Positions 27,796 through 60,748 of a DNA stretch of 64,000 bases are shown here, piece after piece; within the stretch, counting starts at the first letter, position 1, and each line of letters opens with the position of its first letter. The DNA lies in the IMG/VR virus record IMGVR_UViG_3300009514_000001, positions 1 to 64,000 of that record; one strand, 5' to 3'. The position numbers and the translations under genes are program-made. Below the pieces are notes generated by a model that saw only the letters and a list, made by a program, of their open reading frames with translations, had not been told where the DNA came from and made no database searches.

Positions 27796-28743
27796 ATGAT
27801 GACCTCTGACGCCGCTGCACTTTTCGTCGACTTTGAAAACCTCTACTACCGCCTCTTGGACGCACCGTTCAGTCTACGAGGAGACGAGGCCCTCTCGAAG
27901 TCCCTTGACGTCCTGAACGAACTTCGAGACGCCGCCCGCAAGAGTGGCCACTCCCTCATCGTCGAGCGCTGCTATGCCGACTGGGAGTTGATGCCGATGA
28001 CTGCTCAGAGGCAGCTCCAAATCGCTGGAATCCTTCCCAGGTACGTCGACTCTCGCCGCAAGAAGAACTCGGCCGACATCGAGATGAGCCTCGACGTCCT
28101 GAATGTCGTCCTCACCAGGCCCGAGATAACCTTCGTCATCCTAGTCGGCGGGGACCGGGACTACCTGCCCATCCTGAGGCGTCTGAAGGAACACCACCGA
28201 TCCGTTCGCATCGGCTCCCTCAAGGAGTCCCTCTCCGGAGACATGCGGGAGTTCGCCAACACCTACTCCCTGGCCGACGTGGTCGAACTGAACCAGTGGG
28301 TTGAGAGCAAGGAAAAGATTCCCTCGGCTGAAGAAAGCCTCGTAGAGGTCCAGGACGTCGTGGTTGAGGACCTTGTGGTTGAGGACCTTGAGCCGATCGC
28401 TGTCGAAAAGACGCCCAAGACCGCCCCACCTGTAGAGCAGAACCACAACACGAGGAAGGCCCAGAGCATCGAGGTCGGTGAGTGGCACGAACGCTACATC
28501 CGGGCCATGTTGGACTTTCTACGAGACCACGGGTACGACGAGGTCCACATGGGGCCCTACCTTCGCTGGCTGAACCACTCTGGTCGCTTCGACCTAGTCA
28601 GCCACCGCGAACAGAGGAAAGTACTCGACGACCTCCAGGCCCTCGGTGCGGTGAACATCGAGAGCCGGCGCGCCTACGAGGGCCACACCTTTGGTGTAGC
28701 CCACATTGACTGGAACCACAGCCTGGTTCAGTCCGCAAACTAA
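27796..28743 (+). CDS. NYN (LabA/DUF88, PIN-like) domain protein
   Basis: LFVDFENL, KNSADIEMSLD and GGDRDYLP. Confidence 0.88.
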   Translation: MMTSDAAALFVDFENLYYRLLDAPFSLRGDEALSKSLDVLNELRDAARKSGHSLIVERCYADWELMPMTAQRQLQIAGILPRYVDSRRKKNSADIEMSLDVLNVVLTRPEITFVILVGGDRDYLPILRRLKEHHRSVRIGSLKESLSGDMREFANTYSLADVVELNQWVESKEKIPSAEESLVEVQDVVVEDLVVEDLEPIAVEKTPKTAPPVEQNHNTRKAQSIEVGEWHERYIRAMLDFLRDHGYDEVHMGPYLRWLNHSGRFDLVSHREQRKVLDDLQALGAVNIESRRAYEGHTFGVAHIDWNHSLVQSAN

Positions 28744-33265: not shown

Positions 33266-35011
33266 ATGGCCAAGGCCGACAAACTCAAGCGAAAGCTCCT
33301 CCCCCCCAACCACACTGCTGCCGACTTCCAGTACAGGGGTCGGCCATCGACTGATGTGGGCGACTTCGGCGAGGACGTGGGTATCGCTGACGGAGCTTGC
33401 GTCAACCAGTTCGGCGATGACGGCTCCGACAAGGGCCGCAACAACTGCAAGTACTACCACGGCGGCGTCGTCCAGAGTACCAAGGACAACTCCTGGTGGT
33501 GCTACTTCCAGTACGGACGCATCGACGACAGTGGCGAAAGCTGGACGGCCCCCTACTCGAACCCGGCGAAGGGTGGCGACTTCCGCGGCGGAGACTTCCA
33601 GTTCTACGGATGCGAGAGCGAGGCCCACGCGCGCAAAGAGTTCGCCGCCCAGATGAGGAAGAAGTCCACGAACCGCCTGGAGAGGAAAGACCTCGGCGGT
33701 GGCGTGAAGGTCTGGGTCTCGAAGACCGACAAGAACGGCAAGAGCAAGGATGGCTACATCATCCAGGCCTTGGCCACACGGACCCGAGGCCTCCCCGACG
33801 CCTACACCATCAAGGACGACACCGGAGTCACCATCAAGGACGACACCGGAGTCGCCGAGGCGAAGGCGAAGCCCAAGAAGAAGACCAAGCGAGCGTCTTC
33901 GGCCCCCAAGGTCCACCCCCAGGTCGTCAAGCTCGCCCAAGACCTCGTGGGTGGTACCAAGACCTTCGCCCGGGCTGCCGCGGCGGCCACGGGTGTCACG
34001 CCCACCCTGGCGGCCATCACCGAGGCTCGCGACGTCATCATCCCCCAGGCGCTCCAGCTCCTCGCCAAGATCGGAGATGACCTCGACGCCCAGCTCAACG
34101 ACAAGAACCTCCAAGGACTGTCCCGCTACATGGCCGGGCGCATCCCCGTCATCATCCCTCGTGGAGCCACTCAAGAGGACCGGGCCAAGATGCTGCTCCT
34201 CTCCAAAGACACCATCATGGAGCGCCAGCAGGACCTCGACGCGTTCGAGGCCGCCCTCAAGTCTGAGGACTTCGAGACCGAAGGGGACTCCCCGGTCGTC
34301 GACTACAACGCCATGCTCGGCGCCCTGGTCGACTGGATTGACCCCCAGAGCGAGTTGGGAAGGTGGTTGGAACCCACATTCCGGGCGATGTCGAACAATC
34401 GTCACTACAACAGTAGGGGACGTCTGGTCATCAAGAACATGTTCAAGGTGGTTCGGCCGGACAGGGACGCCCTTTTCGTGGCTGCGACCAAGAAAGTCGC
34501 TGCCAAATGTCGGGGAAGAGTCGACCTCAAGGCGCGTCTCCAGCCACCAGCCAGGCCCGATGTGTCGGACATCTCGGACGAATACGACCAGGCCAACGTG
34601 TTCCTGGGCATCCACGGAACCCGGGCTGTGAACATCCACCCCATCATGTCGACGAACCTGAGACTTCCAAAGTCTCTCAGAGGAGTCGTAATCACCGGCA
34701 GTGCCTTCGGATCGGGTATTTACGCAGCTTCCGACTGGAAAAAAAGCTATAATTATTGTGGGCTTAGCAGCTCCTACTACGGGGGTGGAGGTACGATTTC
34801 GGGCCGCGGGTTCTTCATGTTCCTCCAGGACATCATCATGGGCCAGGCATACAAGGCCCGATCCGTGGGTTCTTGGCAGACTCCTCCCAACGGGTGTGAC
34901 TCCATCGCGGCCTACCCGGACTTCATGAGGACGCTTCAGAACGACGAGCACATCATCTTCGACCCGTCGTATCAGCGTATCCGATACCTCATCGAAGGGG
35001 AGATTCACTAG
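33266..35011 (+). CDS. PARP-like ADP-ribosyltransferase with WGR and helical regulatory domains
   Basis: YFQYGRI (WGR-like), helical middle, IHGT, GSAFGSGIYAAS..KKS.NY, FMFL.D...G and LQNDEHIIFD..Q.IRYL (H-Y-E triad). Confidence 0.85.
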   Translation: MAKADKLKRKLLPPNHTAADFQYRGRPSTDVGDFGEDVGIADGACVNQFGDDGSDKGRNNCKYYHGGVVQSTKDNSWWCYFQYGRIDDSGESWTAPYSNPAKGGDFRGGDFQFYGCESEAHARKEFAAQMRKKSTNRLERKDLGGGVKVWVSKTDKNGKSKDGYIIQALATRTRGLPDAYTIKDDTGVTIKDDTGVAEAKAKPKKKTKRASSAPKVHPQVVKLAQDLVGGTKTFARAAAAATGVTPTLAAITEARDVIIPQALQLLAKIGDDLDAQLNDKNLQGLSRYMAGRIPVIIPRGATQEDRAKMLLLSKDTIMERQQDLDAFEAALKSEDFETEGDSPVVDYNAMLGALVDWIDPQSELGRWLEPTFRAMSNNRHYNSRGRLVIKNMFKVVRPDRDALFVAATKKVAAKCRGRVDLKARLQPPARPDVSDISDEYDQANVFLGIHGTRAVNIHPIMSTNLRLPKSLRGVVITGSAFGSGIYAASDWKKSYNYCGLSSSYYGGGGTISGRGFFMFLQDIIMGQAYKARSVGSWQTPPNGCDSIAAYPDFMRTLQNDEHIIFDPSYQRIRYLIEGEIH

Positions 35012-37886: not shown

Positions 37887-37936
37887 CCAGCCCTCCTCAA
37901 GTCTCTACAGAGTACCAGGCGATAGAGAGACAAGTG

Positions 37937-37965
37937 GGTCCACTTTCGGACCCGGTGTCGTATGG
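37937..37965 (+). promoter_or_regulatory. Putative phage promoter GGTCC-N18-GTATGG in front of the cas operon
   Basis: Exact spacing, 23 nt before the GTG start at 37988. Confidence 0.6.
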
Positions 37966-37987
37966 AGGGCTACGAGGTGAGGAAAGA

Positions 37988-39985
37988 GTGAGAGACATCT
38001 ACGCCAGGCCGGGACAGCTTCTTTACGACCACCTGCTGGGTGTCTGTCGAAAAGCTCTCCCAAAGGCAGCTCGACTCAATCTTGAAAAGCCCCTGTTTGA
38101 CCTGATTGTGAGCCACGATTTAGGTAAGGCTTCATTTCTCTGGCAGCAAGGATTGCAGAGAGGAGACAGACCCCTGCCTGACCACGTCTCCGCAGGGGCT
38201 AAGGTACTTCTCGACAGAGGGAGTCCGCTATTCCTGTTGTCGCATAGCCACCATGGTAGTCTAGGCAGTCTCGCGGCTTGTCGCCCCCAAGTAGGGGAGT
38301 TCTCAGTACCCGAAGAAGTTCTGATTTGGCTCTCTGATAACGCACCGAGGCTGGCTAGTGAAGTCCACCAAGAGCTGGGCCTGGGTGTTGAGTTCGGCAG
38401 GGAGAACAACCCCTGGTGGCTGGAAGACACCCCAGAACAGGTCTCTCTTCGTCTACGGCTCCTCTTCTCCCTTCTTGGAGACATGGACATCCAAGATGCT
38501 AGGGAGTTCGACACAGGAGAACGCCAGAATCATCACGGAGTGCAGGAGCTTCACCAGAGGTTCTTGGAGTGGGTCGACAACAGTCCCTCAACTGTCGTCT
38601 CCGAAGCCCTAGCGTTCGCCCGGCACCCCCCCGGTAGGTACCGCATCACATCCCCCCACCCCATCGGCAAGACGACTGCGGGGCTGGGATACGGACTGGC
38701 CCATGCGAGGGCGCACGACCTGGACAGGGTCGTTCTGGTCGCCCCCTACCTTTCCCACCTACACCATCTGGAGGAGCGTCTCACAGACCTCTTCGGAGAG
38801 CGACTGGTCTCTAGTTCAGTTCTCCAGCACCACACCGGGATAGCCACTTCCGAGTTGTCTCCTTGGGCCAAGCCGCTCATCCTGACTACCTCGGCCCAGT
38901 TCTGGGGGACCCTCAACCATCACCATAAGATGGCCCTCCGCAACGTCCACTATCTCTCCCACAGTGTCGTCATCCTCGACGAGAACCAGGCTCTCACCTC
39001 TCGCCTTCACGACCACTATGAAAGCACCCTGAACCTGATGCGGGATGAGTGGGGGTGTTCGATTGTGCAGACAGGACAAACTATCCGTGCCCGCTCAAGA
39101 GAGATGCCAGCCCGCCTGTCGTCTTCCTCAGGGACAGATAATCGGTCGTCCACCCTACTAGGGGAGGTGGAGTGGTCTGCTGTTGCCTCACGGGCTAGTG
39201 AGTCGACCAGAGCAATGGTTGTCACCAACACCATCGCCGATGCTCTGGAGGTGGCCAGCCACATGCCGGAGGGAACTGTGTGCCTGACCAGTCGCCTCTG
39301 CTCGCGAGACCGACAGGACATTGGACACCGCCTCCGCCTCCGAACACAAGAGGGCCCCCTGAGAGTGGTTGCGACTCCCCTGACGGAGACAGACACCGGG
39401 ATGCTCTTCGGTCTCGTGTTGAGGGCCATGTGTGGAGCGGGGTCCCTGCTCCTTTCACGGGCACACCTCCTCCCCGGAGGGGAGATGGGCATCTTCACCT
39501 CGACACCCCCAAGGGCGGCTGGTCGGGATGCCGCTATTACCCAGAGGCTTCTCCAAGACCCCTGGCAGCTCACAGACTCGGACTGGCTGGCCGAGTACTA
39601 CGACCAAGTCTTAGCGACAGGAACCGTCAGCTCCGACCTCGTCAGAGCGGCCCATGAACTCGACTTCAGAGGAGCATCCAGAGCCTTCAGGCTCATCTCA
39701 GATAACAAGACCAACATCCTGCTCGTGAGACACCCCAACGTTGACATCCAAGATGAGATTGACTCCGTATTGGGAGGCCTGAGGTCCCCCTCACCAAGGA
39801 TACGGCGAAAAGCGCGTCGAGACGCCCTGAGATACTCCGTGCCCCTTTCTGAGTATGAGTTGAACTCTGCTAGGAACCAGGGCCTTATCGGAACCCTCGC
39901 CACACATCTGGAATGTGACCTCGAAACACCCATCTGGCTAGGGGGCTACGACGACACAAGTGGAGGACTTCGTTTTTTCTCTTGA
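37988..39985 (+). CDS. cas3: Type I-C Cas3: intact HD domain, degenerate SF2 helicase
   Basis: DHL, SHDLGKA, DHVSAG and SHHG (HD); SPHPIGKTT, ILDENQ, VTNT, ATPLTETDTG and SLLLSRAHL (eroded helicase motifs). Confidence 0.88.
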   Translation: MRDIYARPGQLLYDHLLGVCRKALPKAARLNLEKPLFDLIVSHDLGKASFLWQQGLQRGDRPLPDHVSAGAKVLLDRGSPLFLLSHSHHGSLGSLAACRPQVGEFSVPEEVLIWLSDNAPRLASEVHQELGLGVEFGRENNPWWLEDTPEQVSLRLRLLFSLLGDMDIQDAREFDTGERQNHHGVQELHQRFLEWVDNSPSTVVSEALAFARHPPGRYRITSPHPIGKTTAGLGYGLAHARAHDLDRVVLVAPYLSHLHHLEERLTDLFGERLVSSSVLQHHTGIATSELSPWAKPLILTTSAQFWGTLNHHHKMALRNVHYLSHSVVILDENQALTSRLHDHYESTLNLMRDEWGCSIVQTGQTIRARSREMPARLSSSSGTDNRSSTLLGEVEWSAVASRASESTRAMVVTNTIADALEVASHMPEGTVCLTSRLCSRDRQDIGHRLRLRTQEGPLRVVATPLTETDTGMLFGLVLRAMCGAGSLLLSRAHLLPGGEMGIFTSTPPRAAGRDAAITQRLLQDPWQLTDSDWLAEYYDQVLATGTVSSDLVRAAHELDFRGASRAFRLISDNKTNILLVRHPNVDIQDEIDSVLGGLRSPSPRIRRKARRDALRYSVPLSEYELNSARNQGLIGTLATHLECDLETPIWLGGYDDTSGGLRFFS

Positions 39986-40079
39986 CGAGAGTCAGAGAAA
40001 GCCCTTGCCTTTCCGACCACGGGAACACCCGGGGAACTATTAACAACACAATGTGGTTGAGGCGAAAATTGAGGCGAAA

Positions 40080-40754
40080 ATGAACCTGAGAAAACTACTC
40101 AGCGACCCTGTGAGGGTCAAGGTCACAGGCAGAAGAGGCCTCTTTTCGCGCCATGACTTTCCTACGGAGAGGATTTCATACCCTATCATGACCCCCAGTG
40201 CCGCCCGGGGGCTGCTCAGAAGGATATACGGAAAACCTCAGCATTTCTGGGTGATACAGGCGGTTCAGGTGCTGAATCCAATTCGGTTCGAGAACATCAC
40301 CTACAACGAGGTGAGACTCCCGAAGAGACCTGTTCCTGTGAATGTTAGCAATACATCTCAGGTCCGTATTCAGAGGTCTGCCCAGGTTCTCATAGAGCCC
40401 TCCTACATCATCGAGGCACGGGTTCTGGTGCATCCCTATGCGTACAGGAACGGAGGCATGCCCACCAAGCACACGGAACAGCTCAAGAGACGTCTGAAGA
40501 GGGGCCAGTTCTTCCTCCAACCCGATCTCGGCAAGAGCGAGTTTTTCGCTGATTGTTCTTTGCCGGACGGCAGCGAGAGTCCCCTTCCAGTGAGCCAGGA
40601 CCTCGGCCGTATCCCTCTCTTCGTCGATCAGAGCGAAGGGCGCTCGCACTACTTCCAGGCCTTCATGAAGCGGGGTGTGGTGCAGGTGCCGCAGAAGCAG
40701 CTTCTGGACGTCCTGGAGCCGAAACTCCTCGACCAAGACCCTTGGAGAACGTGA
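40080..40754 (+). CDS. cas5: Type I-C Cas5 (Cas5d, crRNA-processing)
   Basis: ERISYPIMTPSAARG.L..IYGKP..W.I..V.VLNPIRF..I..NEV; TKH..Q..RR..RGQ.F.QP.LG..EF. Confidence 0.92.
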   Translation: MNLRKLLSDPVRVKVTGRRGLFSRHDFPTERISYPIMTPSAARGLLRRIYGKPQHFWVIQAVQVLNPIRFENITYNEVRLPKRPVPVNVSNTSQVRIQRSAQVLIEPSYIIEARVLVHPYAYRNGGMPTKHTEQLKRRLKRGQFFLQPDLGKSEFFADCSLPDGSESPLPVSQDLGRIPLFVDQSEGRSHYFQAFMKRGVVQVPQKQLLDVLEPKLLDQDPWRT

Positions 40755-42655
40755 TGTACAATCTCATCCGAGAACTCACCAAAGTACGGGTGCCCTCGAC
40801 GTTCCCGGGCCCTGGGTATCTCCTCAGAACTGCCAACGTGTTCTGTCACCTAGACAGATCGGGATTCTCTCACTGGGAGGTCAAGAAAGAGGGTGAGCTT
40901 TACATGCTCCCCGACTCTGGACGTACAGGGACGGGTACAAAGGTCGGCCTGTGGGGTGACCAGGTGAGGGTCTACACCGGGAACAAGGAGACCAAGAAGG
41001 CCCGGGCCAAGAGAGAGGCCGCGAACAAGGCGAAGGGGAGAGACAACTCCAACGACTTGGCGGTTGCAATGGCCAAAGCTGTGAGCGAGGCCCACAATCG
41101 CATCAAGGGCCGCGCCGGAGAGGACACCAGGCTGAGTCTCGTCTACACATTTCTCACGGACGAGAGTCAGCGTCAGCGGGCTTACGATGCCCTTCCGGAT
41201 GACGTGAACCCGAACAGTCCTGTCGTCCTTGTTGTCGAGGGGAGGACGATGGTCCGTCCCCAGGAAGGTCCCTGGGCATCTCCGAACATCGACCTCTACG
41301 AGGAAGAGGGCAAACGCATTGCCTGGGTAGGCAATCTCAAGACCGTCGAGGGGGTGTGTAGCGTCACAGGCGAAAAGGACCTCATCCCCGACATCCACCC
41401 TGGGTCCGTGAAGATTGGTGACTCCAGAGCCCAGCTACTTTCCGGAAACATCCCCCAACACTTCCCCAATCCCAAAGGCAAGCTGTGGAGCACTGGCATC
41501 GGCCTGGAGGCTGCCCAGCAGTACACGACCGCCCTTGACTACCTGACGACGGACAAGAACCACCACCTGACGGCCCTCCACACCACGACCAAGAACCCCT
41601 CCTCCAGCGACTTCCAGAAGATAGTCTGGTGGGGCCGGGACGAGGACGCCTCCCTTCCTATCTACCAGAGCATTATCCGCCCCTCTGCGGAAGTCCGCAC
41701 GGCTATCGAGGAAGCCCTTGAGGGGAGGGGAGGTCCGGTCAACCTCGAACACCCCTTCAACACACTCGTCCTAGGTACCCACGTCAGACGCCTGGTGGTG
41801 CTCAGCATGTCGAGCGATACCCTCCTGGGTGTCTACCAGAGTGCCAGTCGATGGCTGAGAATGACCGAGACTCTCAGCGTTGATGAAAGGGGCGCCCTTG
41901 CCCGGAAAAACCACTCTCTCAAGGCCCTGTCGAGGGCCCTTCTGCCCCGCTCAAAGGAGGGTGAGTGGTTCGGTAAGTGCTCTCCCTACACGACGCAGGA
42001 CATCCTGAGGTCCATGCTCTTTCGGGAGCCCCTCACCAAGAGGCTCATCCACGGCCTGATGACTCGTCTCGAACGTGACCAACAGCTAACCACCGCCCGC
42101 ACAGCCCTCTTGCAGGTCTACCTACACCAACGAGGAATCATGGCTGACAAGACCCAAGCCCGAACCCCCATCGACCCGGAACTGGGAGGGTACGTCGGAT
42201 ACAATCTCGGACGTCTCCTCCAAGAGGCGACGGCCATCCAAAAGGCGGCAATCCGAGTCAATCGGGACTTGAGTTCCACCCTCTCATCCTACGCCAAGAA
42301 CCACCCCCGACGGCTGTACGACAAAACCACTCAGAAGGCGGACAATCACTTGACCTCTCTCAGGACCAAAGGGGACTACGGACTGGCCTCAATGTTCGAG
42401 AAGCGCCTGGGGGCCATCATCGGACGCATCTCTATGGTGCCGAAACAACTTCCCGAGGAGCAACTCGCACTGTTTCGCAAGGGACTGCGGGATCAGTATC
42501 TGGCCTCCCAGGCCGCCAACAAAAGACGATCTCAACTTAACAACGAGGACATCGCCAAGGACGAACTCGCATACCAGAAAGCGCAGGTCGACCTGACTCT
42601 AGGTCTCATTGACCCGGAGGACTGCCCTGCACCACCCACCACCGACAAGGAGTGA
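40754..42655 (+). CDS. cas8c: Type I-C Cas8c large subunit
   Basis: CSVTGEK...HP, AAQQYTTALDYL and C-terminal GYNLGRL..Q..A; TGATG coupling to cas5. Confidence 0.82.
   Translation: MYNLIRELTKVRVPSTFPGPGYLLRTANVFCHLDRSGFSHWEVKKEGELYMLPDSGRTGTGTKVGLWGDQVRVYTGNKETKKARAKREAANKAKGRDNSNDLAVAMAKAVSEAHNRIKGRAGEDTRLSLVYTFLTDESQRQRAYDALPDDVNPNSPVVLVVEGRTMVRPQEGPWASPNIDLYEEEGKRIAWVGNLKTVEGVCSVTGEKDLIPDIHPGSVKIGDSRAQLLSGNIPQHFPNPKGKLWSTGIGLEAAQQYTTALDYLTTDKNHHLTALHTTTKNPSSSDFQKIVWWGRDEDASLPIYQSIIRPSAEVRTAIEEALEGRGGPVNLEHPFNTLVLGTHVRRLVVLSMSSDTLLGVYQSASRWLRMTETLSVDERGALARKNHSLKALSRALLPRSKEGEWFGKCSPYTTQDILRSMLFREPLTKRLIHGLMTRLERDQQLTTARTALLQVYLHQRGIMADKTQARTPIDPELGGYVGYNLGRLLQEATAIQKAAIRVNRDLSSTLSSYAKNHPRRLYDKTTQKADNHLTSLRTKGDYGLASMFEKRLGAIIGRISMVPKQLPEEQLALFRKGLRDQYLASQAANKRRSQLNNEDIAKDELAYQKAQVDLTLGLIDPEDCPAPPTTDKE
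42140..42655 (+). CDS. cas11: Cas11c small subunit from an internal in-frame start in cas8c
   Basis: GAGG-AATC-ATG in frame, just before the Y.LGRL C-terminal domain. Confidence 0.6.
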   Translation: MADKTQARTPIDPELGGYVGYNLGRLLQEATAIQKAAIRVNRDLSSTLSSYAKNHPRRLYDKTTQKADNHLTSLRTKGDYGLASMFEKRLGAIIGRISMVPKQLPEEQLALFRKGLRDQYLASQAANKRRSQLNNEDIAKDELAYQKAQVDLTLGLIDPEDCPAPPTTDKE

Positions 42656-42659
42656 AAGA

Positions 42660-43613
42660 ATGGACGTCAAGTGTATCAACCCAAAGACCCGCCACGATTT
42701 GCTAATCACCTTCAGCGTCACCCGAGGCAACCCCAACGGAGATCCGGATGCCGGAGGAGCGCCCCGAGAAACCCAGGATGGCTATGGCATCGTCACCGGT
42801 GAGAGCATCAAGCGCTTGGTACGGGATGCCGCGGAAGAGGTCTTCGAACAGAAGATTTACATCCGGTCCGGACCGCCCCTAGAGGAGGCTCTGTTGAAGG
42901 CCGTCGAGCGAGCCTACAACGGAGACTCCTCCGAAGCTCCCCGTGACAAGAAAGGCAACCTCCTGGTGGCCCAGGTACCAAAGGACAAAATCCAGGCCAT
43001 CCTCGACGAACTGAGATCGTACTTCGACAACCGCATGTTCGGAGCCGTTTTCGCCAGTCAGAAAGTCCCTGTCGGACGATTCCGAGGACCCGTAGCTATC
43101 GGAGATGCCCGGTCCTTCGATGAGATCGTAGTCCGAGAAAATCGCCTCACTCGGGTCGTCTCCGCCAAGTCCGATGAGGGCAAGGACCGAACCGGCCAGG
43201 GCACCTTCGCGGAGCGCTACGCCGTCGACTTCGGCTTCTACGAAAGCTTCGGCAGCTTCAGCCCCCACGGCTCTGGCAAGCACGTCTCCGAGGAGGACCT
43301 CAAGGTGCTCTTCCAGTCTCTCGTCACGGGGTTCCAAGAAAGCGCCTCCGCCCGTCGTGGGGGCTCCTACCAGGTTCACCGCATCTACGTGTTCACGCAC
43401 GACAACGCCCTGGGTAACGCCTCCCAGCACGATCTCCGCAAAGTCGTCAAGGTGACCAAGCGGAAAGACGTGGATAGTCCCCTCTCCCTCGACGACTACC
43501 TCGTCGAAGTGAACCGAGGTGCCATCCCCAAAGGAGTTCACCTGAGCATCATCGACAACAGCAACGTCCTGGACCCGCAGGCCTGGTACGTCGACAGCTC
43601 CCGTCCTCGATAG
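42660..43613 (+). CDS. cas7: Type I-C Cas7 (Csd2)
   Basis: GNPNGDPDAGG.PR, G.VT.ESIKR.VRD, FDNRMFGAVF, RGPV and HDNALGNA. Confidence 0.95.
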   Translation: MDVKCINPKTRHDLLITFSVTRGNPNGDPDAGGAPRETQDGYGIVTGESIKRLVRDAAEEVFEQKIYIRSGPPLEEALLKAVERAYNGDSSEAPRDKKGNLLVAQVPKDKIQAILDELRSYFDNRMFGAVFASQKVPVGRFRGPVAIGDARSFDEIVVRENRLTRVVSAKSDEGKDRTGQGTFAERYAVDFGFYESFGSFSPHGSGKHVSEEDLKVLFQSLVTGFQESASARRGGSYQVHRIYVFTHDNALGNASQHDLRKVVKVTKRKDVDSPLSLDDYLVEVNRGAIPKGVHLSIIDNSNVLDPQAWYVDSSRPR

Positions 43614-43789
43614 TACCCGTTCGAACACCCCAGTGATGAGGAGACCCCTAGGGGTGCTCGAACGATAATGAAATCAATAGGTTGGATGCACTTTTGAGAG
43701 CCTCCCATCTTGTTCTTTGATAAGTGAATTAGGGGTGCTCGAAAACAGTACTCCAACTACCTAAGAACACTAGCTTTTGGGCTAGTGCG
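43614..43789 (+). promoter_or_regulatory. CRISPR leader
   Basis: AT-richer region with CGTTCGAACACCCC/GGGGTGCTCGAACG inverted repeat and a second AGGGGTGCTCGAA. Confidence 0.7.
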
Positions 43790-45473
43790 GTCGTCTTCTC
43801 GAAAGAGGAGACGGGAGATTTCAACGTGAGAAAGCTGAGGAGGTTCTGGAAGCATGGAGCGTCGTCTTCTCGAAAGAGGAGACGGGAGATTTCAACGAGG
43901 TGGGCGTAGACTCCGGGGGACTCGCCTTCAGTCGTCTTCTCGAAAGAGGAGACGGGAGATTTCAACGAGTTCGATGGGGACCGGCTTAAAGGAATCCTGA
44001 GCAGGTCGTCTTCTCGAAAGAGGAGACGGGAGATTTCAACGCCGAGAAGTACCCGGTGTAGTCGTAGCCATGGAACAGTCGTCTTCTCGAAAGAGGAGAC
44101 GGGAGATTTCAACGAGTGTGTAGTGGGCTGCCCCGCTACGGATTACGGGTCGTCTTCTCGAAAGAGGAGACGGGAGATTTCAACGATGATGCCTGCGGTG
44201 ATGTAGGGGCCGTCTTTCCGGGTCGTCTTCTCGAAAGAGGAGACGGGAGATTTCAACCTAGGATAGGGAAACGGGTTCAGCCGAAGACGCACGTCGTCTT
44301 CTCGAAAGAGGAGACGGGAGATTTCAACGTTGAAGAGAAGACCAGGAGAGACAGAGAGGCCACGTCGTCTTCTCGAAAGAGGAGACGGGAGATTTCAACA
44401 ACGTCGACACCAGTCTCTTCTCGCCCTTCTTGAGAGGTCGTCTTCTCGAAAGAGGAGACGGGAGATTTCAACTGATTCTGTCGGACACGACTGTCCTCGA
44501 CGCACTGAGTCGTCTTCTCGAAAGAGGAGACGGGAGATTTCAACGTCTTCAGGAGAGCTGGAGCCGACCCCACCCGACCCCACCTGAGCCCGTCGTCTTC
44601 TCGAAAGAGGAGACGGGAGATTTCAACATGGTCAGGGTCTCGACGGGGAGGTGATACGAGGGCGGTCGTCTTCTCGAAAGAGGAGACGGGAGATTTCAAC
44701 CCGAAGAGATCGTCGGAGGCGAATCCGCCACCCACGAGTCGTCTTCTCGAAAGAGGAAGATTTCAACTATCCGAGGTTAGAACAGGACAGTGAAGGTGTC
44801 GCCTGAGAGCTGAACTCGTGTCGTCTTCTCGAAAGAGGAGACGGGAGATTTCAACAGGGCCTGGCTACCCCCAGGAGACTTCTGGGCGGGCGTCGTCTTC
44901 TCGAAAGAGGAGACGGGAGATTTCAACTCACTCTCGTGGTCCACATCCAACCTCGGGGCTCCTGTCGTCTTCTCGAAAGAGGAGACGGGAGATTTCAACG
45001 ATGAAGAGCCGAAGCCGCGCCAGCGCCCGAGAAGCGCGTCGTCTTCTCGAAAGAGGAGACGGGAGATTTCAACGGAGGGACAGCGTGTTTCTTCTTCGGC
45101 TTGGCTTCCTGTCGTCTTCTCGAAAGAGGAGACGGGAGATTTCAACCGGAGCAGATGCTACGCAGGGCGGAGACTGCCCGCGGTCGTCTTCTCGAAAGAG
45201 GAGACGGGAGATTTCAACGGACTACGAGCGCCGCTATCCTGGCACCACGCACCCCGTCGTCTTCTCGAAAGAGGAGACGGGAGATTTCAACAGGTGCGGT
45301 CGTCTTCTCGAAAGAGGAGACGGGAGATTTCAACAAAGACAGGGACACGGTCGTTCACACCTGGTGTCGTCTTCTCGAAAGAGGAGACGGGAGATTTCAA
45401 CGGCAATGTCGCCCGCTGTTAGCCCCCAGCGCAGCCAGTCGTCTTCTCGAAAGAGGAGACGGGAGATCCGGGG
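43790..45473 (+). CRISPR. Type I-C array: 24 repeats GTCGTCTTCTCGAAAGAGGAGACGGGAGATTTCAAC (36 bp), 23 spacers, mostly 34-38 bp
   Basis: Counted by hand; 9-bp stem with GAAA loop and a G-U pair supports the + strand; the last repeat (45438) is degenerate. Confidence 0.97.
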
Positions 45474-48378: not shown

Positions 48379-49580
48379 ATGGACAGGCTGCACCACTACG
48401 GACGAGATGACTCCGGGGCTCTCTACGAGCTGGCGGTAATCTCTCGTCGTAGGGGTGACCGGGCGCCTTGGGGCGTCGCTGTCAGCCGTCTCGTCGTTCT
48501 TGAGCAGTGGAATCTGCTCGCCGATGCCTTTTTGGGGAGTCCACTTCCCTGGCTCCGGTCGTATTATCCAGTAACAGGGCGCTGTGCCTCCTCATGGAAA
48601 GTGGCAGCACGGTGCCTCCGGGCCCTAGAAGGCCCGGACTGGTGGCTCTGGCTCCAACAGCATTCACTGGACTCTTGCGTCGCCGGTATCCTACATGGCG
48701 ACGACCGGGACCTCAGCGAGGCTGTCAGGGCCGACTGGAACCGGCTTCTTGCCGAAGGCGTCAGCCAAAGGATTCTCGCCAAGGGCAAGAGAGGACCGGT
48801 TCTCTGGGTTCGAGTCCCAGTTCCTTCACTGGACACGAGGATGCGATGAAACACGTTCTGCCCGAAGACACGACCGAGAAAGAGTTCCCCCGCCAGTTGG
48901 CCGCCATCCTGGCGAAAGCCTCGGACGGTGACGAGATCGAGCTGCCGACCAATGAGCTGTGCCAGGTGGCCGCCGAGACCCTCAGGGAGGACTACCCCAA
49001 CAAGCAGAATATCCGCCTGATCAGCCAAGAACCAATTCCCGTGTTCCAAGCCCCGGGCGGCGGACCCATGGTGCTCATCGGACCACCGCCGTGGCTCCAG
49101 GGAGAGGGAGACAACGACACTCCCCTGGCCGGCTCACCTCTCAGAGACTACGACGCCTGGATTCAAAAGCTCCAGGAGGACGGCCGGGTCCCAAGCGAAG
49201 AGGACGTCCAGGAGTGGCGGGAAAGGGAGGCGAGCATCCGAGGCCACGAGACCTGGATGGCCGGCTGGTTCGACAGCATGATTCACGGGTTCATCATGGC
49301 GGGCAGGGAGGAAGGGACCAACGAGTTCCTCGACCGAACCCGCGTCCTTGTCCACCAGAGCGCCCTCGTTGTAGGACACCTGATGGAACTGGCTCGCCAG
49401 GCTGCCAACCGGGAGGAAGGAAAGGGACCCGAAGTCCTTCAGGAGCTTCGGGACCTGATGCGCGACGGTATCCGTTCGGGCATCTCGGACACCTCCAACT
49501 GCCAGTGCCCGAGCTGCGTTCAGCGACGCGAGGAAGAAGCCCGCGCCGCCGAAGCCGCTCTGGATGAGGATGGGGATTGA
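48379..49580 (+). CDS. Two hypothetical ORFs (48379-48849, 48846-49580)
   Basis: ATGA coupling. Confidence 0.55.
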
Positions 49581-60555: not shown

Positions 60556-60748
60556 GGGAGGGGGTCCGGGCGCTCCGGAGCCCGACGTAGACGAGAGTTC
60601 AGCGCGGCCGTCACTGGGTCCGGGCGCTCCGGAGCCCGACGTAGACGAGAGTTCAGCGCGGCCGTCACTGCGGCCGTCACTGGGTCCGGGCGCTCCGGAG
60701 CCCGACGTAGACGAGAGTTCAGCGCGGCCGTCACTGCGGCCGTCACTG
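60556..60748. repeat. Compound tandem repeat (GGTCCGGGCGCTCCGGAGCCCGACGTAGACGAGAGTTCAGCGCGGCCGTCACT x3 with sub-duplications); related single copy at ~62836-62905
   Basis: Read directly from the sequence. Confidence 0.85.

What the first reader, a model, noticed from the sequence alone, without database searches (positions are those of the whole stretch)
37937..45473. Adaptation-less type I-C CRISPR-Cas wired into the phage transcription programme
Seen: cas3-cas5-cas8c-cas7-leader-array with no cas1, cas2 or cas4 in the window; the operon sits behind the same GGTCC-N18-GTAT motif as replication and accessory genes; Cas5 keeps the Tyr and Lys-His residues used for crRNA processing, so no Cas6 is needed. 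By eye no spacer matched elsewhere in this window. Established: large phages carry such minimal systems and rely on host Cas1-Cas2. Inference: a long-resident system aimed at competing elements or host genes.
Basis: partly seen in the sequence, partly recalled or inferred. Interest (0 to 1): 0.65.

Follow-up and report, generated by a model that had tools for sequence, protein, structure and literature searches.

The report
Phage-borne type I-C CRISPR without adaptation genes

Summary
Window 37937-45473 holds cas3-cas5c-cas8c-cas7, a 176-nt leader and 24 repeats of 36 nt with 23 spacers. The window is the first 64 kb of a 222,005-bp IMG/VR virus record whose ends overlap by 96 bp. That record encodes baseplate, tail-fibre, PolA and DnaB genes. 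Six-frame HMM searches of all 222 kb find no Cas1, Cas2, Cas4 or Cas6.

The Cas5c triad (Y50/K130/H131) is kept. The repeat folds into a 10-bp hairpin followed by exactly 11 nt, as type I-C processing requires. Cas3 keeps every HD-nuclease residue and the Walker A and B motifs. Its RecA2 motifs III, V and VI are eroded.

A GGTCC-N17-CGTAT motif precedes cas3 and nine other operons, all in the first 99 kb (seven in the window against 0.31 expected).

No spacer matched the phage itself, cultured phages, plasmids, 18 kin phage records or 401 Planctomycetota genomes. The few spacers scanned against IMG/VR and JGI metagenomes also found nothing. The repeat occurs nowhere else, so use of a host Cas1-Cas2 has no support here.

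All four Cas proteins are at most 39% identical to anything found. Adaptation-less CRISPR-Cas on huge phages has been known since 2020. This is a new, very divergent member of a known kind, and interest is moderate to low.

The parts
37937..37963 (+). Promoter-like motif GGTCC-N17-CGTAT, 24 nt upstream of the cas3 start. Its 5' part forms the palindrome GGGTCC-ACTTTC-GGACCC.
   Evidence: Seven copies in the window against 0.31 expected. Ten strict copies in the genome, all 6-59 nt upstream of a start codon, plus one weaker copy at 48538.
37988..39985 (+). cas3 (665 aa): a fused HD nuclease and SF2 helicase of subtype I-C. The HD motifs and Walker A/B are intact. RecA2 motifs III, V and VI have diverged or are deleted.
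   Evidence: PADLOC Cas3c model, E = 6e-72 over nearly the full length. PDB phmmer hits to 8ZNS and 8G9U. Foldseek hit to 8ZNS at 8e-23. Alignment A2. No Pfam hit, and NCBIfam scores are below the curated cut-offs.
40080..40754 (+). cas5c (224 aa from the ATG at 40080; an alternative GTG start lies at 40053): the pre-crRNA endoribonuclease, with triad Y50/K130/H131.
   Evidence: Pfam Cas_Cas5d, 59.7 bits. PDB hits to Cas5d structures 3KG4, 3VZI and 8DEX at 1e-25 to 1e-30, with the Y and KH residues aligned. The triad is defined in PMC8524198.
40754..42655 (+). cas8c/csd1 (633 aa), the large subunit. Its start overlaps the cas5 stop codon (TGATG).
   Evidence: Pfam Cas_Csd1, 132 bits against a cut-off of 27. 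Weak PDB hits to Cas8c of N. lactamica and D. vulgaris.
42140..42655 (+). Putative internal cas11c reading frame (171 aa) inside cas8c: an ATG preceded by GAGGA.
   Evidence: In-frame start with a Shine-Dalgarno site. The region aligns to the Cas11c part of D. vulgaris Cas8c. The precedent is in PMC7684278. This is inferred, not shown.
42660..43613 (+). cas7/csd2 (317 aa), the backbone subunit.
   Evidence: Pfam Cas_Cas7, 188 bits. NCBIfam TIGR02589, 187 bits, above its cut-off of 182. PDB hit to 7KHA_B at 3e-35.
43614..43789 (+). AT-richer leader. It holds two direct copies of AGGGGTGCTCGAA (43650-43662 and 43731-43743) and an inverted imperfect copy (43620-43631).
   Evidence: The 13-mer is found only here in the 222 kb. 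No sigma-70-like promoter and no terminator-like site lies between cas7 and the array.
43790..45473 (+). CRISPR array: 24 repeats of 36 nt and 23 spacers. Twenty spacers are 31-38 nt; the others are 47, 52 and 7 nt.
   Evidence: The repeat RNA folds into a 10-bp stem, a GAAA loop and an 11-nt tail at -14.9 kcal/mol, z = -3.0.
44738..44767 (+). Defective repeat 14: a 6-nt deletion (GACGGG) removes part of the 3' arm of the hairpin.
   Evidence: Sequence.
45292..45298 (+). Truncated 7-nt spacer 21 between two intact repeats, the scar of a deletion.
45438..45473 (+). Terminal repeat with a degenerate 3' end, which marks the leader-distal (old) end of the array.

Best explanation
This is an interference-only type I-C CRISPR-Cas module carried by a roughly 222-kb tailed (contractile-tail-like) phage.

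Proposed mechanism:
1. The operon cas3-cas5c-cas8c(-cas11c)-cas7 and the array are transcribed from a phage-specific promoter-like motif. That motif is shared with nine other operons in the first 99 kb of the genome, probably an early or middle class.
2. Cas5c cuts each repeat at the 3' base of its hairpin. This leaves an 11-nt 5' handle (GAGAUUUCAAC) on the next crRNA.
3. Cas5c, Cas7, Cas8c and probably an internally translated Cas11c assemble on each crRNA into a Cascade complex.
4. Cascade binds matching DNA and recruits Cas3, whose HD nuclease cuts the displaced strand.
5. With no Cas1, Cas2 or Cas4, the phage cannot add spacers by itself. The 23 spacers are therefore a fixed or slowly decaying repertoire. 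It is most probably directed at other mobile elements or phages that share the unknown host.

Shown here: the gene content, the motif integrity, the repeat structure, the absence of adaptation genes, the phage context and the motif enrichment.

Inferred: expression, processing, interference, and the class of target.
For: Subtype assignment: Cas8c, Cas7c and Cas5c pass the Pfam cut-offs, and Cas7 also passes the NCBIfam equivalog cut-off. Cas3 matches the PADLOC Cas3c model at 6e-72 and solved I-C Cas3 structures by sequence and by fold.

Intact catalytic equipment: the Cas5c triad Y50/K130/H131. All invariant Cas3 HD residues (H15, H43-D44, K47, H66, H88-H89, D165, D167, D170), Walker A G227-K228-T229 and the DE(N)Q box at 331-334. 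Four uninterrupted, translationally coupled ORFs.

Repeat: a hairpin followed by exactly 11 nt, with the canonical GTCG start and AAC end.

No adaptation genes or Cas6 in 222 kb.

Phage context: baseplate wedge, baseplate and tail-fibre proteins, PolA, DnaB and helicases. Eighteen kin phage records share the 1154-aa baseplate protein over its full length. The terminal overlap is 96 bp.

Motif.

No self-targeting. The codon usage of the operon lies within the phage's own range.

Precedent: huge phages with CRISPR-Cas that lack Cas1, Cas2 and Cas4 (PMC7162821; PMC11656645). In IMG/VR, 29 of 50 records with a related Cas7 lack Cas1.
Against: No protospacer was found for any spacer, so neither a target nor a PAM is known.

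Cas3 RecA2 is eroded. Motif III TATQP has become TGQTI. Motif V has lost AGVD. Motif VI QAAGRCNR is reduced to a single Arg after a 5-residue deletion. The model confidence across residues 365-575 is mostly below 50. Processive degradation by Cas3 may therefore be impaired.

Three array units are damaged.

There is no expression evidence, because no sequencing run could be listed.

CheckV rates the record 42% complete despite its terminal repeat, so missing genes cannot be excluded with certainty.

No sigma factor that would read the motif was found. The motif is absent from the kin phages.
Confidence: 0.6

Rival explanations
1. The system works by binding or nicking rather than by shredding. 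Cascade binds its targets, but Cas3 has lost efficient ATP-driven translocation. The outcome would be transcriptional blocking or a single nick in the R-loop, not long-range degradation.
For: RecA2 motifs III, V and VI, which are invariant in the 14 closest I-C Cas3 proteins, are changed or deleted here, while the HD domain and RecA1 are intact. RecA2 is modelled with low confidence. As precedents, huge-phage systems with missing or altered nucleases have been suggested to act as repressors (PMC7162821), and nuclease-free type IV-A systems silence their targets (PMC11656645).
Against: Walker A, Walker B, motif Ia and one motif VI arginine (R491) remain. The C-terminal domain aligns to the end of the protein (Y654, G659). 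The whole protein still scores 6e-72 against a Cas3c model. Sequence divergence alone does not show loss of activity.
Confidence: 0.17
2. The system is a decaying relic. It was captured once from a bacterium together with that donor's spacers and is no longer useful to the phage. On this view the spacers are fossils of the donor's immunity.
For: There is no adaptation module. Three array units are damaged. Cas3 motifs are eroded. No target was found anywhere that was searched. None of the 18 kin records carries a Cas7.
Against: All four genes are intact and coupled, with 5.6 kb free of frameshifts or stops. Twenty-two repeats are perfectly identical. Catalytic residues of Cas5c and of the Cas3 HD domain are kept despite at most 39% and 28% identity to the nearest relatives, which argues for purifying selection. 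The operon has phage-like codon usage and a phage motif in front of it.
Confidence: 0.13
3. The system is not truly adaptation-less. Either the record is an incomplete genome and cas1, cas2 and cas4 lie on a missing part, or spacers are added in trans by a host I-C adaptation complex that recognises this repeat and leader.
For: CheckV estimates 42% completeness, because kin phages have genomes of 315-380 kb. Twenty-two identical repeats with mostly regular 34-38-nt spacers look like an array built by a working integrase. Acquisition in trans has been shown for a plasmid type IV-A system (PMC11656645).
Against: The two ends share an exact 96-bp overlap that occurs nowhere else, which is typical of a closed circular assembly. 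In I-C loci the adaptation genes normally lie between cas7 and the array, and here the leader follows cas7 directly. The repeat, or its 18- to 29-nt cores, is absent from GTDB species genomes, IMG/VR and JGI metagenomes. The array is identical in the second sample that holds it.
Confidence: 0.08
4. The contig is host chromosome, a plasmid or a chimeric assembly, so the system is an ordinary bacterial one.
For: No terminase, portal or capsid family was recognised.
Against: Baseplate, tail-fibre and phage-type replication genes are present. One strand carries about 100 kb of giant structural-type ORFs. There are no tRNA genes in the record. Eighteen viral kin records were found. The kin phages also lack a Terminase_6 hit, so that absence is uninformative. 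IMG/VR classes the record as a virus with direct terminal repeats.
Confidence: 0.02

Closest known systems
Canonical bacterial type I-C (Dvulg) CRISPR-Cas, for example from Desulfovibrio vulgaris, Neisseria lactamica or Bacillus halodurans
   Same: The gene order cas3-cas5c-cas8c-cas7 is the same. There is no Cas6, and Cas5c has the Tyr/Lys/His triad. Cas3 is a fused HD nuclease and helicase. The repeat starts with GTCG, forms a hairpin, has an 11-nt 3' tail and ends in AAC. A likely internal Cas11c start lies in cas8c.
   Different: There is no cas4-cas1-cas2. The repeat is 36 nt rather than 32-33 nt, and its tail is GAGATTTCAAC rather than TGGATTGAAAC (7 of 11 positions identical). The proteins are only 25-39% identical to any relative. 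Cas3 is about 60 residues shorter, and its RecA2 motifs III, V and VI are eroded. The system sits on a phage genome behind a phage-specific motif.
Adaptation-less CRISPR-Cas systems of huge phages (Al-Shayeb et al. 2020, PMC7162821), including their 'type I-C variant'
   Same: The genome is a phage genome of more than 200 kb. The type I-C-like system lacks Cas1 and Cas2, has no Cas6 and has a Cas5d-like processing enzyme.
   Different: The published variant has an unrelated helicase in place of Cas3, altered Cas5 active-site residues, and a second Cas-phi system. This phage has a true, though divergent, Cas3c with an intact HD domain, a conserved Cas5c triad and only one array. Sequence relatedness to the published phages could not be tested.
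Vibrio phage ICP1 type I-F CRISPR-Cas
   Same: A phage-encoded class 1 system with Cas3-type nuclease activity, used by the phage as a weapon.
   Different: ICP1 carries Cas1 and a Cas2-3 fusion and acquires spacers. Its target, the PLE island, is known. Here there is no adaptation module and no known target.

Membership tests
Type I-C CRISPR-Cas | Signature large subunit Cas8c/Csd1 | tested here: met
   Pfam PF09709 scores 132.1 bits against a cut-off of 27, covering profile positions 50-551 of 559. The stricter NCBIfam equivalog TIGR01863 scores 91.5, below its cut-off of 218.65. PDB hits to Cas8c are weak, about 1e-4.
Type I-C CRISPR-Cas | Cas7 of the Csd2 family | tested here: met
   TIGR02589 scores 187 bits against a cut-off of 182.25. 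Pfam Cas_Cas7 scores 188 bits. The PDB I-C Cas7 structures 7KHA and 8G9S match at about 3e-35.
Type I-C CRISPR-Cas | Catalytic Cas5c (Tyr/Lys/His triad) in place of Cas6 | tested here: met
   Y50, K130 and H131 align with the triad positions of solved Cas5c proteins. The triad is defined in PMC8524198. No Cas6 family match was found in 222 kb. RNase activity was not assayed.
Type I-C CRISPR-Cas | Single-chain Cas3 with an HD nuclease and an SF2 helicase | tested here: inconclusive
   The fold and family are met: PADLOC Cas3c at 6e-72 and Foldseek 8ZNS at 8e-23. The HD domain and RecA1 motifs are intact. RecA2 motifs III, V and VI differ from all 14 nearest relatives, with motif VI largely deleted, so helicase competence is open.
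Type I-C CRISPR-Cas | Repeat with a stable hairpin followed by an 11-nt 5'-handle sequence | tested here: met
   RNAfold gives a 10-bp stem, a GAAA loop and then exactly 11 unpaired nt. The length (36 nt) and the sequence differ from the 32-33-nt canonical repeats. No Rfam CRISPR-DR family matches.
Type I-C CRISPR-Cas | Adaptation module cas4-cas1-cas2 next to the array | tested here: not met
   No Cas1, Cas2 or Cas4 match was found in six-frame searches of the whole record, while the control genomes scored positive. The module is therefore an interference-only derivative, not a full I-C locus.
Type I-C CRISPR-Cas | 5'-TTC PAM | not testable with these tools
   No protospacer was found, so no PAM could be derived.
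Type I-C CRISPR-Cas | Cas11c small subunit translated from inside cas8c | tested here: inconclusive
   An in-frame ATG at 42140 has GAGGA 3 nt upstream, at the position that aligns with the Cas11c part of D. vulgaris Cas8c. Translation was not shown.
Phage-encoded adaptation-less CRISPR-Cas (huge-phage class) | Encoded on a phage genome rather than on a host chromosome or a provirus flank | tested here: met
   The record is a virus record with a 96-bp terminal overlap. It carries baseplate, tail-fibre, PolA and DnaB genes and has 18 kin phage records. Capsid and terminase genes were not recognised in it or in its kin.
Phage-encoded adaptation-less CRISPR-Cas (huge-phage class) | Spacers target competing phages, mobile elements or host genes | tested here: inconclusive
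   All spacers were searched against the phage's own genome, INPHARED, PLSDB, 18 kin records and 401 Planctomycetota genomes. Spacers 1, 2, 4 and 12 were scanned against IMG/VR, and spacer 1 against JGI metagenomes. No credible hit was found. Most spacers were never searched against the large metagenome collections.

The most novel reading that the evidence does not exclude
The phage has domesticated a type I-C system into a fixed-repertoire weapon with an altered Cas3. On this reading Cas3 is an HD nuclease on a helicase whose RecA2 ATPase motifs are degraded. It would nick or block its targets rather than shred them, and it would be switched on as part of a private phage regulon (GGTCC-N17-CGTAT) early in infection. 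That would make it a natural short-range or binding-type variant of I-C, distinct from both the canonical I-C system and the published huge-phage variant.
Probability: 0.15. Interest if true: 0.6.

Novelty: new member of a known kind. Interest (0 to 1): 0.35.

Why it matters
The locus adds a well-resolved and very divergent example to the set of phage-borne, adaptation-less CRISPR-Cas systems. It is a complete Cascade-Cas3 interference module on what appears to be a closed 222-kb phage genome.

Two details could be useful:
- The Cas3 is compact (665 aa) and keeps its nuclease but has unusual RecA2 motifs. This bears on how much helicase activity type I interference needs, and on the engineering of compact I-C editors.
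- The cas operon shares a clear sequence motif with nine other phage operons. This gives a testable handle on when in infection a phage deploys CRISPR.

It does not open a new category. The central biological question, what the 23 spacers are aimed at, stays unanswered.

Tried and rejected
Spacer targets, all searches negative:
- BLAST of every spacer against the masked 222-kb genome found only chance hits.
- Six-frame peptide matching of the spacers to the phage genome did no better than shuffled spacers.
- BLAST of the whole array against INPHARED phages found only a 33-nt, 88% identical hit at E = 0.5. BLAST against PLSDB plasmids found nothing.
- Pattern scans with every sixth base free: spacer 1 against JGI metagenomes and IMG/VR, and spacer 2 against IMG/VR.
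- Codon-degenerate scans of spacers 4 and 12 against IMG/VR.
- The array against 18 kin phage records and against 401 Planctomycetota genomes.

Repeat searches, all with zero hits: a 33-mer and an 18-mer against IMG/VR, a 29-mer against GTDB species genomes, and a 23-mer against JGI metagenomes.

Rejected lead. One 29-of-30-nt match of the repeat (not of a spacer) lies at the start of a RecD2-like gene in a Planctomycetota MAG. It sits inside a coding sequence and there is no array there, so I treat it as coincidence.

Host inference failed. The relatives of the phage ThyA are a taxonomic mixture, with a Phycisphaerae MAG first at 63% identity and then marine archaea and others. There are no tRNA genes.

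Other searches that led nowhere:
- Sequencing runs: none was listed, so read laying was not used and there is no expression or population data.
- Sigma factor for the motif: only weak hits below cut-off.
- Terminase_6 families: absent here and also in the kin phages, so uninformative.
- The IMG/VR locus L075, a 221-kb contig, looked like possible kin carrying the same system but is not.
- Paper search for the JGI sample identifiers: nothing.

The large profile search (search of protein representatives) and complex prediction were not used, because no claim depends on them. No alternative genetic code was used.

Full report
**1. The observation**

The window is the first 64,000 bp of a 222,005-bp IMG/VR virus record (JGI sample 3300009514). 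On the + strand there are four consecutive, closely packed genes:
- cas3, 37988-39985. The ORF opens at 37934, but the GTG at 37988 has a strong Shine-Dalgarno site.
- cas5c, 40080-40754.
- cas8c, 40754-42655. Its ATG overlaps the cas5 stop codon.
- cas7, 42660-43613.

Pfam assigns Cas_Cas5d (59.7 bits), Cas_Csd1 (132 bits) and Cas_Cas7 (188 bits), all above their cut-offs. NCBIfam's I-C Cas7 model is also passed.

Cas3 has no Pfam hit and scores below the NCBIfam cut-offs. It does match the PADLOC Cas3c model at E = 6e-72 over almost its full length. It matches solved I-C Cas3 proteins by sequence (8ZNS 2e-12, 8G9U 1e-11). A predicted model matches them by fold (8ZNS 8e-23).

A 176-nt leader (43614-43789) follows cas7. 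The array runs from 43790 to 45473 and has 24 repeats of 36 nt. Twenty-two are identical. Repeat 14 has a 6-nt deletion, and the last repeat has a degenerate 3' end. Twenty are 31-38 nt long, and the others are 47, 52 and 7 nt. It is the only array in the genome.

**2. Is it really adaptation-less, and really a phage?**

Six-frame HMM searches of all 222 kb find no Cas1, Cas2, Cas4 or Cas6, while the control genomes score positive. PADLOC and Pfam scans of the neighbouring genes on both sides find nothing related to Cas.

The record has an exact 96-bp terminal overlap that occurs nowhere else, as a closed circular assembly would. It encodes:
- a gp6-like baseplate wedge protein, further baseplate proteins and a tail-fibre protein;
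- a family A DNA polymerase, a DnaB-like helicase and large helicases;
- a thymidylate synthase interrupted by an HNH domain;
- giant ORFs of up to 3,789 aa along one strand.

The 1154-aa baseplate protein has full-length relatives (32-48% identity) in 18 IMG/VR records, three of them 315-380 kb long.

One caveat remains. CheckV rates the record 42% complete because its kin are larger. No terminase or capsid family was recognised, but the same is true of the kin, including one rated 100% complete.

**3. Functional state of the parts**

- Cas5c. It aligns over its whole length with solved Cas5d/Cas5c structures (3KG4 9e-30, 3VZI, 8DEX). Y50, K130 and H131 (numbered from the ATG at 40080) fall at the positions of the Tyr/Lys/His catalytic triad defined by mutagenesis (PMC8524198).
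- Repeat. The repeat RNA folds into a 10-bp stem with a GAAA loop, followed by exactly 11 unpaired nucleotides. This is the geometry that type I-C Cas5c cleavage requires. Compared with the canonical 32-33-nt I-C repeats recovered from IMG/VR loci (...GTGGATTGAAAC), it is longer. Its tail, GAGATTTCAAC, shares 7 of 11 positions, including the terminal AAC. No Rfam repeat family matches.
- Cas11c. An in-frame ATG at 42140 is preceded by GAGGA. It lies where the D. vulgaris Cas8c sequence starts to align as the Cas11c small subunit. This is consistent with the internal translation described for I-C (PMC7684278). It is an inference.
- Cas3. In an alignment with its 14 nearest relatives, every invariant HD residue, Walker A (GKT), motifs Ia and Ib and the DExQ box are retained. 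Motif III (TATQP) reads TGQTI. Motif V (STQxxEAGVD) reads ATPLTETDTG. Motif VI (QAAGRCNR) is reduced to one arginine by a 5-residue deletion. In the AlphaFold model the HD and RecA1 parts are confident, while RecA2 (residues 365-575) is mostly below pLDDT 50. The nuclease looks intact, and the translocase is in doubt.
- Array. Three of its units are damaged: the deleted repeat 14, the 52-nt unit after it, and the 7-nt spacer 21.

**4. The transcription motif**

GGTCC-N18-GTAT occurs 7 times in the window, all on the + strand, against 0.31 expected. Genome-wide there are 10 strict copies and one weaker copy. The consensus is gGGTCCa.Tt......Cc..gGtCGTAT.

All copies lie in the first 99 kb. They are on the + strand up to 58 kb and on the - strand from 65 to 99 kb. 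Each strict copy lies 6-59 nt upstream of a start codon, most of them preceded by a recognisable Shine-Dalgarno site. One copy lies 24 nt before cas3.

The genes behind the other copies are a PARP/WGR protein, a NYN-domain RNase, a protein with a peptidoglycan-binding domain, and unknowns. They are not recognisable replication genes.

The bipartite layout resembles ECF-type promoters (GGAAC-N16-17-CGT). That resemblance is from my own knowledge and is only a lead. No credible sigma factor was found in the phage. The motif is absent from all 18 kin records.

The leader has no copy of this motif, no sigma-70-like promoter, and no terminator-like site between cas7 and the array. The array may therefore be read through from the cas promoter. 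The leader does hold a 13-nt element of its own, AGGGGTGCTCGAA, in two direct copies plus one inverted imperfect copy. That element is unique to the leader.

**5. Targets and host**

No spacer matches the phage itself at the DNA or the peptide level. The whole array finds nothing credible in 50,697 cultured phage records, 72,556 plasmids, 18 kin phage records or 401 Planctomycetota genomes.

Spacers 1, 2, 4 and 12 were scanned against IMG/VR, and spacer 1 against JGI metagenomes. All were negative. No PAM can be derived.

The spacers average 62% G+C, close to the phage's own 60%.

The repeat is absent from IMG/VR, from 185,579 species genomes and from JGI metagenomes. No host array that could lend Cas1-Cas2 was identified.

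The only other contig with this system comes from the sibling sample 3300009537. It is 99.99% identical, array included. No sequencing run could be listed. The host remains unknown.

**6. Origin**

The Cas proteins are far from everything that was searched:
- Cas7 is at most 39% identical to any relative found among 5.8 billion proteins.
- Cas3 is at most 28% identical.
- Against 56 IMG/VR loci with a related Cas7, identities are at most 37% (Cas7), 39% (Cas5), about 31% (Cas3) and 26% (Cas8).

The codon usage of the operon falls within the phage's own range. None of the 18 sampled kin records carries a Cas7.

Together this fits an old capture that has since adapted to the phage and sits in a poorly sampled lineage. 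It does not prove that history.

**7. Comparison with what is known, and verdict**

Huge phages that carry CRISPR-Cas without Cas1, Cas2 and Cas4 were described in 2020. They include a type I-C variant with a Cas5d-like enzyme and a foreign helicase in place of Cas3 (PMC7162821) and were reviewed in 2024 (PMC11656645).

In IMG/VR, 29 of 50 records with a related Cas7 lack Cas1. Among the 16 records rated at least 90% complete, 10 lack it.

This locus is a new, unusually divergent member of that known kind. It works like a type I-C interference module. It does not meet the full I-C locus definition, because the adaptation module is absent. The helicase competence of its Cas3 is an open point.

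Three parts of the interpretation remain unsupported inferences: reliance on host Cas1-Cas2, the class of target, and the identity of the genes that share the motif. Interest is moderate to low (0.35).

Noticed in passing
window 33266-35011 (+): A 581-aa protein with a PARP catalytic domain and a WGR domain lies directly behind another copy of the GGTCC-N17-CGTAT motif (33197). It may be a phage ADP-ribosyltransferase acting on host or nucleic-acid targets.
   Followed up: partly
window 27796-28743 (+): A NYN-domain protein (a predicted RNase, Pfam 3.7e-15) is also preceded by the motif (27733).
   Followed up: partly
window 43620-43743 (leader): The 13-nt element AGGGGTGCTCGAA occurs twice in direct orientation, 81 nt apart, and once inverted and imperfect. 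It is found nowhere else in the 222 kb. It could be a regulator or integration-related site, or a sign of a partial leader duplication.
   Followed up: partly
window 43826-45437 (spacers): Twelve of the 23 spacers begin with G, including the six closest to the leader, against about 30% G in the genome. This may mean the true repeat-spacer boundary or the acquisition rule differs by one base.
   Followed up: no
L019:15034-16383 (-) = genome 219034-220383: A 449-aa protein matches a PHROG transposase family (phrog_506, E = 7e-117). This suggests an insertion-sequence-type element inside the phage genome.
   Followed up: no
L018:11657-13120 (+) = genome 195657-197120: The thymidylate synthase is interrupted by an HNH endonuclease domain (residues about 124-261). 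Its closest genomic relative is in a Phycisphaerae MAG (63% identity), followed by marine archaea.
   Followed up: partly
genome 99-190 kb, - strand (L013-L018): There is a run of giant ORFs (3,789, 3,604, 2,411, 1,942, 1,839 and 1,646 aa). Those scanned against PHROGs or Pfam gave few or no family matches; the two largest were not scanned. There are no tRNA genes anywhere in the 222 kb.
   Followed up: partly
L107:604-633 (Planctomycetota MAG, contig of 2,133 bp): A 29-of-30-nt match to the first 26 nt of the CRISPR repeat plus 4 flanking bases lies at the 5' end of a RecD2-like helicase gene. There is no array there, so I judge it a coincidence of a palindromic coding sequence.
   Followed up: yes
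window 60562-60730 (+): A tandem repeat of about 54-66 nt, in three copies containing GGGTCCGGGCGCTCCG, lies inside a coding region.
   Followed up: no
whole record (G000): CheckV estimates 42% completeness, although the contig has an exact 96-bp terminal overlap. The kin phages are 315-380 kb, so this phage either has a much smaller genome than its relatives or the overlap is misleading.
   Followed up: partly
window 48538-48564 (+): A weaker eleventh copy of the promoter-like motif (AGTCC in place of GGTCC) lies inside a predicted gene, upstream of 48846-49580.
   Followed up: no
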